A stretch of 63,669 nucleotides of DNA, the filler included, from Octopus bimaculoides (Eukaryota), in NCBI RefSeq assembly GCF_001194135.2. It is 7 parts of 6 records of this genome, joined end to end, with 100 filler letters (N's around TTAATTAATTAA, not from the genome) between each part and the next. Parts side by side here need not be neighbours in the genome. Positions count along the whole stretch, not along the records: positions 43,110 to 51,965 come from NW_026407441.1; 6 more parts are not named here. One strand, given 5' to 3'. The position numbers and the translations under genes were made by a program. Positions 43,696 through 49,389 of this stretch are shown piece by piece. Under the pieces are notes generated by a model. The model worked only from the letters and a program-made list of their open reading frames with translations. It made no database searches and was not told the origin of the DNA. Positions within the stretch are counted from its first letter, which is position 1, and every line of letters begins with the position of its first letter.

Positions 43696-43737
43696 CTTCA
43701 ACACAGCCTTCTTTTTCTGTTGTAACTTCACAAGCAG
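43696..43737 (+). CDS. Candidate 42-bp phase 1-1 exon, (A/S)STQPSFSVVTSQA; divergent member of the Ser/Thr repeat
   Basis: Acceptor ttttactctttccacctcaatAG and donor CAG|GTAAAG. Same length as the three paralogous exons downstream; phase 0 has a stop. Confidence 0.55.
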
Positions 43738-44006
43738 GTAAAGTATTTAACCATATGAACCATTTCTTCATATATGTTCTTTATATATAGAACTTCTATT
43801 AATGCTCTTTTACTCTTTTACTTGTTTCAGTCATTTGACTGCGGCCATGCTGGAGCACCGCCTTTAGTCAAGCAAATCGACCCCAGGACTTATTCTTTGG
43901 AAGCCTAGTACTTATTCCATCGGTCTCTTTTGCCGAACCACTAAGTGACGTAGACGTAAACACACCAGCGTCGGTTGTCAAGCGATGGTGGTGGGGACAA
44001 ACACAG

Positions 44007-44045
<39 letters not shown>

Positions 44046-44269
44046 TACGACAGGCTTCTTTCAGTTTCCGTCTACCAAATCCATTCACAAGGCTTTGGTC
44101 GGCCCGAGCCTATAGTAGAAGACACTTGCCCAAGGTGCCATGCAGTGGGAATGAACCCGGAACCATGTGGTTAGTAAGCAAGCTACTTACCACACAGCCA
44201 CTCCCGCACCTGCTATTTACAAACAAAACATTATTCTTGCCCATTTCTTACCTTTTAAGGCTACATTTG

Positions 44270-44790
44270 TCGCAGTTATGTCGTGATCATTACCAACATG
44301 TTCGTTACCAACGTGATCGTTACCAACGTGATCGTTACCAACGTGATCGTTACCAACGTCGCCTTCCTGGCACTTGTGCCAGTGGCACGTGAAAAGACAT
44401 TCGAGCGAAATCATTGCCAGTGCCGATGGACTGACTCCTGTGCAGGTGGCACATAAAATACACCATTTCGAGCATGGCCATTGCCAGCAAGACATTCGAG
44501 CGAGATTGTTGCCAGTGCCGATGGACTGACTCCTGTGCAGGTGGCACGTAAAATACACCATTTCGAGCTTGGCCGTTGCCAGTACTGCCTGACTGGCCTT
44601 CGTGCCAGTGGCACGTAAAAGCACCTACTACACTCTTGGAGTGGTTGGCGTTAGGAAGGGCATCCAGCTGTAGAAACTCTGCCAAATCAGATTGGAGCCT
44701 GGTGTTGTCATCCAGTTTCACCAGTCCTCAGTCAAATCGTCCAACCCATGCTAGCATGGAAAGCGGACGTTAAACTACGATGATGATGAT
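44270..44790 (+). mobile_element. SINE family B with 15-bp (CGTGATCGTTACCAA) and ~60-bp internal repeats
   Basis: Same tail as 39420-39550. This explains ORFs 44217-44624 and 44350-44721. Confidence 0.85.
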
Positions 44791-44857
44791 GTCATCAGTT
44801 GCCCTTTTGGTTTCCTGTGATTGTTCATATTATTTGAATGATATTTTATTTACATAG

Positions 44858-44920
44858 ATGCATACACACGCAGACTTGAATTCCACATCACAGGCAAAAC
44901 TTTAGCTCTTCATCAGAAAC
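44858..44920 (+). CDS. Candidate 63-bp phase 1-1 exon, DAYTRRLEFHITGKTLALHQK
   Basis: Acceptor gatattttatttacatAG and donor AC|GTAAAC. Multiple of 3, only phase 1 is open, and it joins in frame to both neighbours. Splice sites are moderate. Confidence 0.35.
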
Positions 44921-45140
44921 GTAAACATTAAAAAACATGCCTAGAAAATCTTTAAAATGGGACATTAAAAAAAAAAGGCAAAGAGTGTGTCATGTCCATA
45001 TTGCATTTAAATGAGCACAAGTGAGACATGTTAGAGATTTCATGCACAAGACTACAGAAGGAGAGATGACCTTAGATTGAGTGGGTGTGATTTTTCTCGA
45101 AAATAATATATATTACATTTTCTATATCTTAAAATTTCAG

Positions 45141-45182
45141 CATCATCTACAGCAACCTCATATCCTGGTTCTACACAACAAG
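45141..45182 (+). CDS. 42-bp phase 1-1 exon, repeat 1: (A/P)SSTATSYPGSTQQ
   Basis: ttctatatcttaaaatttcAG|CATCATCTACAGCA...AAG|GTTTGT; paralogous to 46269 and 49348. Confidence 0.68.
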
Positions 45183-45719: not shown

Positions 45720-45784
<65 letters not shown>

Positions 45785-45936
45785 CATGTGTGTGTGTATA
45801 TAATCATATATATGTATCTGTGTGTGTGTATTATTTATATATATCTGTGTGTATGTATGTATGTATGCATATGTAAAAGGAAACAGTTCATCATGTCAAT
45901 ACTGCTTTGAAATTACCACATGTGAGAATAGTTATA

Positions 45937-46148
45937 CAGGGTGTCCACAAAGTCTGGGTTCATGGGGATTAACACATACTTTAAGATATTATTATTTCTT
46001 ATATTTAATTGTTTATGTTATGATTTTATTTACTCCATGTATCCACATGGGGATTAACACATACTTTAAGAATTTATTATTTCTTATATTTAATTGTTTA
46101 TGTTATGATTTTATTTACTCCATGTAGCCAGACTTTGTGGACACCCTG
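45937..46148. mobile_element. Tc1/mariner-type MITE with 21-bp perfect TIRs and an internal ~83-bp tandem duplication
   Basis: TA|CAGGGTGTCCACAAAGTCTGG ... CCAGACTTTGTGGACACCCTG|CA. Absent from the paralogous introns upstream of 45141 and 49348. Confidence 0.9.
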
Positions 46149-46268
46149 CAGATGTCATGCACAAGAGTACAGAAGGGGAGATAAGTTTAAAGTGTGTGTG
46201 TATGTTTGTATATAATGATTTGTCTTGAATATAATATATATAACAATTTCTATATTCTAAAATTTCAG

Positions 46269-46310
46269 CATCATCTACAGCACCTCCATATTCTGCATCT
46301 ATACCGACAG
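46269..46310 (+). CDS. 42-bp phase 1-1 exon, repeat 2: ASSTAPPYSASIPT
   Basis: ttctatattctaaaatttcAG|CATCATCTACAGCA...CAG|GTTAGT. Confidence 0.7.
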
Positions 46311-46404
46311 GTTAGTGAATAATGACTTGTTTACTTAGTAAATATATACACACACAAACACATACATACACACATATATATATACACATATGAATATATG
46401 TAAA

Positions 46405-48621
46405 TGTGGTGTTATGGGCTGTAATGAGCTATGTAGTGTTGGTGAAGAGGAAACCAGCAGTGGGCAAGAAGATGAAGAGAGCAGCAATAAGCAGGATGAA
46501 GAAGCCAGCAACAGCATGCCAGGAACTCAGGCCAGTCCTGGGGTCGCACAGTGACCATAGAGGGAGCGGCACCCTCCTCCCTTTGTTGGCTGATTATGAA
46601 ACCAGTTAAGGTGTGAGTTCAGGAGCGAGGAGTGAGTGGGAAAGCCAGTTGAGTGATCAGTAGATCGGGGTGGGCATGTGGTGTTTGTGGTGTTATGGGC
46701 TGTAATGAGCTATGTGGTGTTGGTGGAGAGGNNNNNNNNNNNNNNNNNNNNNNNNNNNNNNNNNNNNNNNNNNNNNNNNNNNNNNNNNNNNNNNNNNNNN
46801 NNNNNNNNNNNNNNNNNNNNNNNNNNNNNNNNNNNNNNNNNNNNNNNNNNNNNNNNNNNNNNNNNNNNNNNNNNNNNNNNNNNNNNNNNNNNNNNNNNNN
46901 NNNNNNNNNNNNNNNNNNNNNNNNNNNNNNNNNNNNNNNNNNNNNNNNNNNNNNNNNNNNNNNNNNNNNNNNNNNNNNNNNNNNNNNNNNNNNNNNNNNN
47001 NNNNNNNNNNNNNNNNNNNNNNNNNNNNNNNNNNNNNNNNNNNNNNNNNNNNNNNNNNNNNNNNNNNNNNNNNNNNNNNNNNNNNNNNNNNNNNNNNNNN
47101 NNNNNNNNNNNNNNNNNNNNNNNNNNNNNNNNNNNNNNNNNNNNNNNNNNNNNNNNNNNNNNNNNNNNNNNNNNNNNNNNNNNNNNNNNNNNNNNNNNNN
47201 NNNNNNNNNNNNNNNNNNNNNNNNNNNNNNNNNNNNNNNNNNNNNNNNNNNNNNNNNNNNNNNNNNNNNNNNNNNNNNNNNNNNNNNNNNNNNNNNNNNN
47301 NNNNNNNNNNNNNNNNNNNNNNNNNNNNNNNNNNNNNNNNNNNNNNNNNNNNNNNNNNNNNNNNNNNNNNNNNNNNNNNNNNNNNNNNNNNNNNNNNNNN
47401 NNNNNNNNNNNNNNNNNNNNNGGTTGCAGGTGCCAGAGGATGTAGGGCAGGATGTGGCTGCAGTATGCTGTCTGAGTGACTCGGAGTTGAGGAGACTACA
47501 TACCATGCATCACATGGGAGTGGACAGGACATTGTTCCTAGCCAGCAAAGTCGACTCCAAGGTAACAAGATGGAGCATGCAGAGAGTGGTTAGCAGCTGT
47601 GACAGGTGCCAGTCCATCAACCCTGCTCTGGGCATACACGAGGCGGGAAGTATTCCAGTGGACCACAACTGGAAACGACTGGCAGTGGACATAACACACT
47701 ACCGGCAGGGGACATATGGAGGGAGATGAAGATGGGGACCGCAGAGGAAATTGCGAGAGTATCAAATGAGATATTCCTGGAACGACGCACCGTTGATGGG
47801 CTGCTTCTGAATAATNNNNNNNNNNNNNNNNNNNNNNNNNNNNNNNNNNNNNNNNNNNNNNNNNNNNNNNNNNNNATCGTACCATCAAGACCATGGCAGA
47901 GAGGGGCCGCATTTCACCAATCGAGGCCGTATTTTGGTACAATATGTTGCCCAGGTCAGGACAAGCTGAGGAGTCGGTGCCACACAGAGCAATATTCAGG
48001 TATGAGTGGAGGCATTCGTGTATTGCATCAATGCGACCCGGGGGAGGGGAAGAGCATGCTTTCGTGCAGGTCGGGGAAGAAGTTTGGGTAAAAACCCCAA
48101 ATGCATGGTGTACATCACGATGGGGAAAGGGAATAATAACCTCCATCAATTCGAAGAACGTCTCTGTCGATGGTATGCCACACCATGTTTTGGATGTGCA
48201 GAAGATTGTCAATGCCTCAGAGGATAAAAACCAGCAGCAGTGGGCAAGAAGATGAAGACAGCAACAGCATGCCAGGAACTCAGGCCAGTCCCGGGGTCGC
48301 ACAGCAACCACAGAGGGAATGGCACCCTCCTCCCTCTGTTGGCTGATTATGAAACCAGTTAAGGTGTGAGTTCGGGAGCGAGGATTGAGTGGGAAAGCCG
48401 GTTGAGTGATTAGTAGATTAGGTGGGGGTGCATGATGGTGGTGGTGTTATGGGCTGTGATGAGCTATATGGTGTTGGTGGAGAGGATTGCAGATGAGGCA
48501 AATGGAAGTGAAGACTACAGGGGCCAGTGGAAGATCCACAGGGGCATGCGCAGGCAAAAAGCACATGTGAAAGGTCATGTTTTTATCTGGTCAATGATCG
48601 CTCATCCCGCCACGGTCAACA
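46405..48621 (+). mobile_element. Rearranged, truncated Gypsy LTR retrotransposon (integrase 47422-48255; 3' LTR ~48439-48621)
   Basis: HHMGVDRT...CDRCQS (integrase HHCC), WKRLAVDITHY (rve start), AVFWYN..PR and VGEEVWVK...RWGKG. A G-rich PPT-like tract precedes a TG...CA LTR. The pol end plus LTR start is duplicated at 46405-46731. Confidence 0.92.
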
Positions 48622-49347
48622 GGTAAGGTCTCTGTATTTCTTTCTCCCTTTTGCTTCTTTTTCTGTTGTCTTTTTCCTTCATCATGCTAAAGTAAATATA
48701 TTATTTTGTTAATCTTCTTTTAATATACTATAAAGTATATTAGCTATTTTTTAAGTCAATACCATGTTCTATTGTGTTACAAGAGCACTTTGCACTATTT
48801 TGTTAACAACATGATATAAAGCATGCTACCAACACAGTAGATCTTGGTGTAAACTTATAAAAACATTTGTACATAATATTTAATAGTATCCTATGGGTGT
48901 AGAAACAGTCAGAAATGTATATGTGATATGCAGAAGCATATGTCACAAGGCATTATAGTAAAATATTAAAATATCCATCCACAAATCATTATTGTTATTG
49001 CCATGTATATATCTATATATGTACACATATTTATATAAATACACATACACAGAGACATGTTTAAGACAAGAAATATAAGGAAAAAGGTTTATACTTCGCT
49101 TTTGTCCTTGGTCATAAGCATAAGAGAAAATCCCAGGGAAGCTCAAGAAAGAGATTTATAAAGGAAATCATTTTATCATTTCAATACTGCATTTAAATTA
49201 CCACATGTGAGAATAGTTAGAGAGATCATGCACAAGAGGACAGAAGGGGCAATAAGCTAAGGGTGTGTGTTTGTGTTTGTATTTGTGTAAATAATTTTTC
49301 GTCTTAAATATAATATATATTACAATTTTGATATTCTAAAATTTCAG

Positions 49348-49389
49348 CATCATCTACTGCAGTCCCATATTCCTCATCTATTCAGCCAG
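49348..49389 (+). CDS. 42-bp phase 1-1 exon, repeat 3: ASSTAVPYSSSIQP
   Basis: ttttgatattctaaaatttcAG|CATCATCTACTGCA...CAG|GTTAGT. Confidence 0.7.

What the first reader, a model, noticed from the sequence alone, without database searches (positions are those of the whole stretch)
43696..49389. Exon-by-exon tandem expansion of a 14-aa Ser/Thr/Pro repeat in an unidentified host gene
Seen: three 42-bp segments (45141-45182, 46269-46310, 49348-49389) start CATCATCTAC after a near-identical acceptor (...aaaatttcAG) and end at GT donors. About 200 bp of upstream and 40 bp of downstream intron are also homologous. The exons differ at many positions (11/42 between copies 1 and 2) but have no indels, whereas the flanks do. 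A divergent 42-bp exon (43696) and a 63-bp exon (44858) lie upstream. Phase 1 is the only frame open in all of them and in the 57-bp exon at 28868. It gives ...STQPSFSVVTSQA-[DAYTRRLEFHITGKTLALHQK]-xSSTATSYPGSTQQ-ASSTAPPYSASIPT-ASSTAVPYSSSIQP. Established: symmetric phase-1 exons are typical of extracellular modular proteins, and S/T/P-rich stalks are O-glycosylated. Inference: a mucin-like stalk whose length grows by duplication and could be tuned by cassette splicing. In phase 0 the three paralogues would read His-rich (HHLQ..HI..), which cannot be excluded if they splice without the other exons.
Basis: partly seen in the sequence, partly recalled or inferred. Interest (0 to 1): 0.7.

Follow-up and report, generated by a model that had tools for sequence, protein, structure and literature searches.

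The report
Triplicated 42-bp exon-like unit, octopus intron DNA
A roughly 0.3-kb stretch holding a 42-base, splice-site-bounded segment has been copied three times in a row inside transposon-filled octopus DNA; it looks like an ordinary tandem exon duplication that would add 14-residue Ser/Thr/Pro-rich repeats to an unknown protein, but nothing here shows that it is expressed.

Summary
Three 42-bp segments (45141-45182, 46269-46310, 49348-49389) share an identical acceptor context (TAAAATTTCAG|CATCATCTAC), end at GT donors, and lie in about 275 bp of homologous flank. They differ at 9-13 of 42 positions. Both N gaps lie inside an LTR retroelement between copies 2 and 3, so they do not touch the exons, and neither gap length can be trusted.

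Evidence for real exons:
- The longest invariant run covers the acceptor junction.
- The three copies and the independent 42-bp segment at 43696 have the strongest 3-periodic cytosine signal in the piece, all in the same phase (NCN codons give Ser/Thr/Pro/Ala).
- The unit is absent from 148 kb of Octopus sinensis DNA in which the local SINE gives 20 matches.

Evidence against:
- The exon body is no better conserved than its introns, and pN/pS is about 1 in every frame.
- All three frames are open in the paralogues. Only the doubtful 63-bp segment singles out phase 1.
- No protein in two very large libraries, one of which demonstrably includes Octopus annotations, contains the peptide.

The host gene, its expression and the mucin or O-glycosylation reading remain untested. 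If real, this is an ordinary tandem exon duplication.

The parts
43696..43737 (+). Independent 42-bp exon-like segment. The offset-2 frame reads STQPSFSVVTSQA. Acceptor ..ctttccacctcaatAG|, donor CAG|gtaaag.
   Evidence: The 3-periodic C signal (9/0/3 by phase, P=6e-4) is in the same phase as the paralogues and ranks 5th of 7133 windows. The flanks do not align significantly with the triplicated unit. It lies in a 366-bp island with no match to O. sinensis repeats, between two inverted SINEs.
44858..44920 (+). 63-bp candidate exon (DAYTRRLEFHITGKTLALHQK), doubtful.
   Evidence: It is open only at offset 2. It has no C periodicity (5/6/7). The donor is AAC|gtaaac. Its first 21 nt plus acceptor align 24/32 to AG-less microsatellite-like DNA upstream of copy 3 (14 of 500 shuffles reach the score).
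44960..45231 (+). Unit copy 1, with exon-like core 45141-45182 (A)SSTATSYPGSTQQ and donor AAG|gtttgtg.
45869..46345 (+). Unit copy 2, with exon-like core 46269-46310 (A)SSTAPPYSASIPT and donor CAG|gttagtg. Its upstream flank is interrupted by a MITE at 45937-46148.
   Evidence: The MITE has 21-nt terminal inverted repeats (cagggtgtccacaaagtctgg) and an internal 85-bp duplication.
49100..49435 (+). Unit copy 3, with exon-like core 49348-49389 (A)SSTAVPYSSSIQP and donor CAG|gttagtg.
46406..48702 (+). LTR retroelement inserted between copies 2 and 3. It has LTR-like repeats and a degenerate integrase, and it contains both N gaps (46732-47421, 47816-47875).
   Evidence: Direct repeats D8 and D17. 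Integrase_H2C2 is weak in Pfam. There are 46 homologues, many carrying PF00665, including O. sinensis and O. bimaculoides proteins. It is colinear with L006 at 82-87% identity.
43132..43435 (.). SINE copy, inverted relative to the copy at 43802-44225. Together they bracket the 43696 segment.
   Evidence: Inverted repeats I1 (190 nt, 94%) and I2 (113 nt, 87%). The SINE query taken from the partner copy (43805-44185) gives 20 HSPs of at least 60 bp in O. sinensis loci, and this interval has matches up to 21 deep.
43802..44225 (.). SINE copy, the partner of the inverted pair. A-box and B-box-like motifs lie on the minus strand.
45289..45779 (.). Repeat-derived filler between copies 1 and 2: an unnamed repeat, a SINE fragment at 45553-45699, and microsatellites.
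   Evidence: D11. Matches in O. sinensis loci. Microsatellites from TRF.

Best explanation
A genomic unit of about 0.3 kb, made of a 42-bp core with its acceptor, its donor and about 235 bp of intron, was duplicated twice in tandem. Copy 1 split off first, then copies 2 and 3. The mechanism was probably unequal crossing-over or slippage between the microsatellite tracts that bound every copy.

SINE, MITE and LTR-retroelement insertions later stretched the spacing to 1128 and 3079 bp.

The core is most likely a real symmetric (phase 1-1) cassette exon of an unidentified Octopus gene. Each copy would add 14 residues with the pattern A-S-S-T-A-x-(P/S)-Y-(S/P)-x-S-(I/T)-x-x. The run would form an intrinsically disordered, Ser/Thr/Pro/Ala-rich linker in which composition and length matter more than exact sequence. 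Any subset of copies could be included without breaking the frame.

Shown: the triplication, the conserved splice-signal blocks, the 3-periodicity, the later TE insertions, and the position of the gaps.

Inferred: splicing, reading frame, disorder, and any glycosylation or cellular location.
For: - Three in-register copies with homologous flanks.
- The longest invariant run among the copies (21 nt, -11..+10) covers the acceptor junction; 115 of 5000 label shuffles reach that length. The donor block AGGTT.GTGAATA is also kept.
- The acceptor block (-50..+14) has fewer variable columns than the far upstream flank, 19% against 34%, P=0.04.
- The length is 42 = 3 x 14 in all copies, and no frame has a stop.
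- The cytosine 3-periodicity is the strongest in the piece: ranks 1, 2 and 3, and rank 5 for the non-alignable 43696 segment, which has the same length and phase and good splice consensus.
- At offset 2 the S+T+P content is 54-64%.
- The units have no match in 148 kb of O. sinensis DNA, where the neighbouring SINE gives 20 HSPs and the subrepeat element 40.
- The units show no consistent pol III boxes or terminal inverted repeats.
- Short repetitive exons are commonly missed by annotation tools (PMC6469411). About 10% of animal genes carry tandemly duplicated exons, many of them unannotated (PMC9013439).
Against: - No protein contains the peptide, in any of the three frames, in a 5.8-billion-sequence library that demonstrably holds O. 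sinensis RefSeq and O. bimaculoides UniRef proteins and Logan-derived ORFs. A full HMMER pass over 1.84 billion representatives gave only two junk tandem-repeat hits.
- The exon body is not conserved. Variable columns are 38% against 29% in the flanks, and 54% in positions 15-42.
- pN/pS is 0.5-1.1 in every frame.
- All frames are open, so the frame is not determined.
- The polypyrimidine tract is interrupted (..ttctaaaatttcag), and the donors have T at +3.
- A single 14-residue exact match would fall below the reportable E-value. So the negative protein result only excludes proteins that carry two or more of these exons.
Confidence: 0.5

Rival explanations
1. Unexpressed pseudo-exons. An intronic or intergenic segment was triplicated by the same microsatellite-mediated mechanism. 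The AG...GT boundaries, the open frames and the Ser/Thr/Pro reading are incidental, following from a G-poor, C-periodic ancestral sequence, perhaps a decayed trinucleotide repeat (CAT CAT CTA CAG CA..).
For: - The exon body diverges as fast as the flanks or faster, and pN/pS is about 1.
- No protein or ORF match was found anywhere.
- All three frames are open, so openness carries no information.
- The indel-free block is not confined to the exon.
- The conservation statistics are only marginal (P about 0.02-0.04).
Against: - The two best-kept blocks near the core coincide with the two splice junctions.
- An independent, non-alignable 42-bp segment 1.4 kb upstream has the same length, the same C phase relative to a good AG, and a good GTAAAG donor. 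That is hard to get by chance twice in 8.8 kb.
Confidence: 0.3
2. Real exons, but not the Ser/Thr/Pro protein. They could be read at offset 0 (His/Leu/Gln-rich: HHLQQPHILVLHNK...) or offset 1 (IIYSNLISWFYTT...), or they could be untranslated exons of a UTR or lncRNA.
For: - Offsets 0, 1 and 2 are all open in the three paralogues, and offset 1 is open in all four 42-bp segments.
- Tandem exon duplications are also frequent in untranslated regions (PMC9013439).
- pN/pS does not favour any frame.
Against: - Offset 0 has a stop in the 43696 segment.
- C falling on codon position 2 (NCN = Ser/Thr/Pro/Ala) is the usual cause of this kind of periodicity in low-complexity coding DNA.
- C on position 3 in 10-12 of 14 codons would be odd in an AT-rich genome. 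This last point is my own knowledge and was not tested.
- The all-frame protein query found nothing.
Confidence: 0.12
3. The unit is a member of a dispersed transposable-element family (SINE- or MITE-sized, about 275 bp, with microsatellite tails) that happens to have three same-orientation copies here.
For: - The unit size is typical of non-autonomous elements.
- Each copy is followed by simple-sequence DNA.
- The region is saturated with TEs.
Against: - There are 0 matches in 148 kb of O. sinensis DNA, against 20 for the SINE and 40 for the subrepeat element.
- There are no consistent pol III boxes, terminal inverted repeats or poly-A.
- All three copies are in one orientation within 4.3 kb.
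- This test only bounds the copy number at very roughly fewer than 60,000 per 2.7 Gb.
Confidence: 0.05

Closest known systems
Tandem exon duplication (Letunic, Copley and Bork 2002, as summarised in PMC9013439)
   Same: Adjacent, same-orientation homologous exon-plus-intron units inside one locus, with a frame-preserving length. Such exons are often unannotated.
   Different: The classic cases are mutually exclusive exons that encode structured, conserved segments. Here the copies would be additive cassette repeats of a low-complexity peptide, and their expression is unproven.
Titin PEVK region (one short low-complexity repeat per exon; PMC6469411)
   Same: Many short exons each encode one repeat of a disordered, compositionally biased segment. 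The array is expanded by local duplication with TE involvement, varies in length, and is commonly missed by gene finders.
   Different: The composition differs (Pro/Glu/Val/Lys against Ser/Thr/Pro/Ala/Tyr). Only 3-4 exons are seen here. There is no sequence relation and the gene is unknown.
Mucin-type PTS (Pro/Thr/Ser) tandem-repeat domains and Ser/Thr-rich stalks of cell-surface proteins (for example CD44 variable exons and CD45 exons 4-6; from my own knowledge)
   Same: S+T+P is 54-64% at offset 2. The units are repeated, and symmetric cassette exons could tune stalk length.
   Different: Typical mucin VNTRs sit in one large exon. No signal peptide, transmembrane segment or extracellular domain is available here. 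A conserved Tyr in each repeat and the Gln content fit an intracellular prion-like or disordered linker equally well.

Membership tests
Tandemly duplicated exons | Two or more adjacent homologous segments in the same orientation at one locus | tested here: met
   There are three copies with 69-79% identity in the core. The flanks show 15-23% mismatches.
Tandemly duplicated exons | Each copy is bounded by splice acceptor and donor signals | tested here: met
   AG and GT are present in all copies. The invariant 21-mer covers the acceptor and the donor block is kept. This tests consensus only, not function.
Tandemly duplicated exons | Length keeps the reading frame when copies are added or skipped | tested here: met
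   The core is 42 bp in all three copies and in the 43696 segment.
Tandemly duplicated exons | Copies are included in mature transcripts of an identified gene | not testable with these tools
   There is no transcript resource here. The indirect test was negative: no protein or ORF in the libraries carries the peptide.
Mucin-like PTS / O-glycosylated stalk | High Ser+Thr+Pro content in tandem repeats | tested here: met
   54-64% at offset 2, but the frame itself is not established.
Mucin-like PTS / O-glycosylated stalk | Secreted or membrane protein context (signal peptide, transmembrane segment, extracellular domains) | not testable with these tools
   The rest of the gene is not in the piece, and no homologue was found.
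Mucin-like PTS / O-glycosylated stalk | O-glycosylation of the repeats | not testable with these tools
   This needs biochemistry.
Dispersed repeat (SINE/MITE) | Many copies at unlinked loci | tested here: not met
   There are 0 HSPs in 148 kb of O. sinensis DNA, against 20 for the SINE. Power is low for families of moderate copy number. The JGI metagenome scan was uninformative because the SINE control also found nothing.
Dispersed repeat (SINE/MITE) | Structural hallmarks (pol III boxes, terminal inverted repeats, poly-A tail) | tested here: not met
   There are no consistent A/B boxes or terminal inverted repeats in the three units, whereas the SINE shows box-like motifs.

The most novel reading that the evidence does not exclude
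The copies are real cassette exons whose bodies evolve faster than their own introns (54% against 29% variable columns) while splice signals, length and Ser/Thr/Pro composition are held. That would be a diversifying, exon-per-repeat stalk in an unannotated cephalopod gene. Inclusion of its upstream sister exon (43696) could be modulated by the 300-nt inverted SINE pair around it, through looping-out, circularisation or ADAR editing.
Probability: 0.08. Interest if true: 0.45.

Novelty: new member of a known kind. Interest (0 to 1): 0.2.

Why it matters
If the exons are real, this is one more example of how low-complexity linkers grow exon by exon, and of a short-exon gene region that current Octopus annotations miss. 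It would not change any general understanding. Its practical value is as a flag for re-annotating this locus with long-read transcripts. The gap analysis also shows that the assembly's N-run lengths at this locus are not reliable: 60 N against about 112 bp, and 690 N against about 2.7 kb.

Tried and rejected
- Protein homology with the spliced peptide gave no hits.
- An exhaustive HMMER search of 1.84 billion representatives gave only two hits. Both are translated tandem-repeat junk that share composition, not homology.
- A composite query held all three frames plus the stop-to-stop ORFs around each copy, in the hope of pulling the same locus from another assembly. It found nothing among 8000 word-sharing candidates.
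- A JGI metagenome scan for the unit's 24-mer found nothing. A scan for the SINE as a positive control also found nothing. That collection therefore holds no detectable Octopus DNA, and the negative result means nothing.
- L006 and L008, which carry the closest retroelement copies, were checked as possible orthologous loci. Their flanks have no unit match, so they are paralogous TE copies.
- L002, an ENA contig, lacks the SINE (only microsatellite matches), so I judged it not to be Octopus and left it out of the repeat-coverage tally.
- An alignment of the 43696 flanks to the unit was not significant (z at most 1.5).
- pN/pS was computed per frame to choose the frame, but it has no power with 13 codons.
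- Rfam gave only sub-threshold matches to microRNA families over microsatellites, and tRNA scans found nothing.
- Pfam on the mariner-like fragment gave no significant hit.

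
Full report
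**What the piece is**

The piece 43110-51965 is AT-rich, microsatellite-laden animal DNA. A retroelement integrase within it has 46 homologues. These include RefSeq 'uncharacterized protein' entries of Octopus sinensis and a UniRef entry of Octopus bimaculoides that is 77% identical over the C-terminal part. A 381-bp SINE in the piece recurs at 74-89% identity in O. sinensis chromosome loci, with 20 HSPs of at least 60 bp. The piece is therefore Octopus nuclear DNA. I did not determine the species.

**The observation**

- The three 42-bp segments sit exactly where stated.
- Each follows ..aaaatttcAG. The donors are AAG|gtttgtg (copy 1) and CAG|gttagtg (copies 2 and 3).
- They differ at 11, 13 and 9 of 42 positions.
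- The 19-mer across the acceptor occurs three times in the window and never in 100 shuffles.
- After removing a MITE from the upstream flank of copy 2, the three copies align over about 190 bp upstream and 45-50 bp downstream.
- Copies 2 and 3 are the closest pair (about 15% flank mismatches). Copy 1 is more distant (22-23%). The order of events was therefore copy 1 first, then the split of 2 and 3.

**The gaps**

Both N runs inside the finding lie in one LTR retroelement, 46406-48702.

- Left of the 690-N gap is the start of an LTR (46677-46731). Right of it is the integrase zinc-finger region (47422 onward; HH..C..C motif, weak Pfam PF17921 match, strong homologues).
- In the closest O. sinensis relative (L006, LTRs at 8072-8310 and 12002-12240), those two points are about 2.7 kb apart. 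Unless this copy is internally deleted, the 690 N understate the gap.
- Across the 60-N gap the integrase changes from frame 2 to frame 1. L006 has 112 bp there (11313-11424), and that length would put both sides in one frame.
- The sequence across the gaps is therefore not continuous as written. But the gaps interrupt a transposon, not the exon-like units. Because both edges of each gap are retroelement sequence, hidden extra copies are unlikely, though not excluded.
- A third gap (50597-51405), downstream of copy 3, has TE-like sequence on its left and a microsatellite on its right.

**The surroundings**

I marked intervals of the piece that match 148 kb of O. sinensis DNA fetched through retroelement genes. 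This gave 43132-43435 and 43802-44225 (SINEs in opposite orientation), 44340-44791 and 49603-49950 (an element with 65/95-bp subrepeats), 45289-45779 (an unnamed repeat, a SINE fragment and microsatellites), 46408-48702 (the retroelement), and pieces of 50044-50596.

The four 42-bp segments all sit in the unmatched islands between these. Removing the recognisable insertions and microsatellites brings the copy-to-copy spacing down from 1128 and 3079 bp to roughly 0.3 kb. This is my estimate, and it is about the length of the homologous unit. Every unit is bounded by CA/TA/CT-type simple sequence. That fits unequal crossing-over or slippage as the duplication mechanism, which is an inference.

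**Is the core an exon? Evidence for**

1. The longest run of columns invariant in all three copies is 21 nt and spans -11 to +10 of the acceptor junction. Only 115 of 5000 shuffles of the invariant/variable labels reach that length. The donor block AGGTT.GTGAATA is also kept.
2. The acceptor block (-50..+14) has fewer variable columns than the far upstream flank, 19% against 34%, P=0.04.
3. Cytosine is strongly 3-periodic. Counting from the first base, phase 0 holds 10, 12 and 10 of the 14-15 Cs in copies 1-3 (P=4e-4, 3e-6 and 1e-3). Among 7133 overlapping 42-bp windows of the piece, the copies rank 1, 2 and 3 for this contrast.
4. The upstream 42-bp segment at 43696 cannot be aligned to the unit beyond chance. 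Yet it has the same length, the same C phase relative to its AG (9/0/3, P=6e-4, rank 5), a good pyrimidine tract and a CAG|gtaaag donor. That is a second, largely independent instance of the same signature.
5. The unit is not one of the abundant repeat families. It has no HSP in the 148 kb where the SINE gives 20 and the subrepeat element 40. It has no consistent pol III boxes or terminal inverted repeats.

**Is the core an exon? Evidence against**

1. The core is not protected. 38% of its columns vary against 29% in the flanks (P=0.27). Positions 15-42 vary at 54% (P=0.016, a partition chosen after looking).
2. Nei-Gojobori pN/pS is 0.5-1.1 in each of the three frames. There is no sign of purifying selection on residues and no basis for choosing a frame.
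3. All three frames are open in all three copies, and offsets 1 and 2 are open in all four 42-bp segments.
4. The spliced peptide, with and without the other frames and the surrounding ORFs, matched nothing in a 5.8-billion-protein library. One search shows that this library holds Octopus RefSeq and UniRef entries and Logan-derived ORFs. A full HMMER scan of 1.84 billion cluster representatives returned only two translated tandem repeats. A protein carrying two or more of these exons would have been reported. A protein with a single 14-residue match would not, because about 28 bits is too low against a library of this size.

**The 63-bp segment**

This is the only thing that makes phase 1 unique, and it is the weakest part.

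- It has no C periodicity (5/6/7).
- It has C at -1 and A at +5 of the donor.
- It begins in degenerate CA/TA repeat. That stretch aligns 24/32 with AG-less sequence upstream of copy 3 (14 of 500 shuffles reach the score).

I would not include it in the model. If it is skipped, the junction residue before copy 1 is Ala, as at the other junctions.

**Most likely reading**

At offset 2 the periodic C falls on codon position 2 (NCN = Ser, Thr, Pro, Ala). This gives 54-64% S+T+P and the repeat A-S-S-T-A-x-(P/S)-Y-(S/P)-x-S-(I/T)-x-x.

Conserved splice signals and length, a conserved composition and a free-running sequence are what one expects of exons that encode a disordered linker. In such a linker only composition and length are under selection. 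That is my preferred explanation at about 0.5.

It works like the exon-per-repeat low-complexity regions exemplified by titin PEVK. There, short repetitive exons are duplicated locally, are variably included, and are often missed by annotation (PMC6469411). It also belongs formally to the common class of tandem exon duplications (PMC9013439).

Whether the product is an extracellular O-glycosylated stalk cannot be judged, because no other part of the gene is available. The conserved Tyr and the Gln residues fit an intracellular disordered region just as well.

**Rivals**

- An unexpressed triplicated segment whose exon-like look is incidental: 0.3.
- Real exons read in another frame or untranslated: 0.12.
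- A dispersed TE: 0.05.

**Verdict**

The coding and mucin parts are plausible but unverified. Even if true, this is an ordinary kind of gene-structure event.

Noticed in passing
window 43132-43435 and 43802-44225 (arms 43239-43428 / 43805-43994 and 43135-43247 / 43989-44101): Two SINE copies in inverted orientation bracket the 42-bp segment at 43696, which lies in the 376-nt interval between the arms. Their complementarity is 94% over 190 nt and 87% over a further 113 nt. In a pre-mRNA this could form a long duplex, which would be a candidate substrate for ADAR editing, exon skipping or circularisation.
   Followed up: partly
window 46406-48702: A degenerate LTR retroelement. The integrase carries a stop and a frameshift near 47715-47729. 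An extra partial copy of the integrase 3' end plus the LTR start (46408-46731) precedes the 690-N gap. This suggests tandem or nested elements, or a mis-join. The N-run lengths disagree with the O. sinensis relative: 60 against 112 bp, and 690 bp against about 2.7 kb.
   Followed up: yes
window 45937-46148: A 212-bp MITE-like insertion found only in the upstream flank of copy 2. It has 21-nt terminal inverted repeats (cagggtgtccacaaagtctgg / ccagactttgtggacaccctg) and an internal 85-bp tandem duplication at 96% identity. It had no match in the 148 kb of O. sinensis DNA.
   Followed up: partly
window 44280-44791 and 49470-49950: The same composite repeat lies in direct orientation in two different intervals. 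It has a 15-bp tandem head and subrepeats of about 65 and 95 bp that each end in ..GGCACGTAAAA. It is abundant in O. sinensis loci (40 HSPs of at least 60 bp). I could not identify the family.
   Followed up: partly
window 45020-45041, 46154-46175 and 49225-49246 (positions -122 to -101 relative to each core): This is the second-best conserved block among the three units: TCATGCACAAGA..ACAGAAGG, about 110 nt upstream of each acceptor. It could be an intronic regulatory element or chance.
   Followed up: no
window 43649-43660: The string cag|ACATCATCT lies 45 nt upstream of the 43696 segment. It mimics the acceptor and first bases of the triplicated core (cag|CATCATCT). It could be a relic of an older copy, but the alignment is not significant (z at most 1.5).
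   Followed up: partly
window 49972-50100: The ORF fragment ITIREFSEDVWISYRSVHSIITEDLSMRRVSSKFVPKLL resembles, from memory, the N-terminal HTH of mariner-type transposases. Pfam gave no significant hit. Parts of the wider 49946-50596 interval recur at 84% identity in O. sinensis locus L004.
   Followed up: partly
window 50131-50188: A perfect 21-bp tandem repeat (GAGTCTGTCCTGTGGTCGCAT, 2.8 copies, 100% identity) lies next to the mariner-like fragment.
   Followed up: no
window 51617-51812: A near-palindrome with 90-nt arms, 83% complementary and 16 nt apart, flanked by TA microsatellites. It is probably another MITE-like hairpin element.
   Followed up: no
L002 (ENA ERZ25072293, contig ctg224647): An ENA 'metagenome' contig of 67 kb is packed with retroelement ORFs related to the Octopus integrase at 55% identity. 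It lacks the Octopus SINE. It looks like host DNA of some other animal assembled within a metagenome.
   Followed up: no
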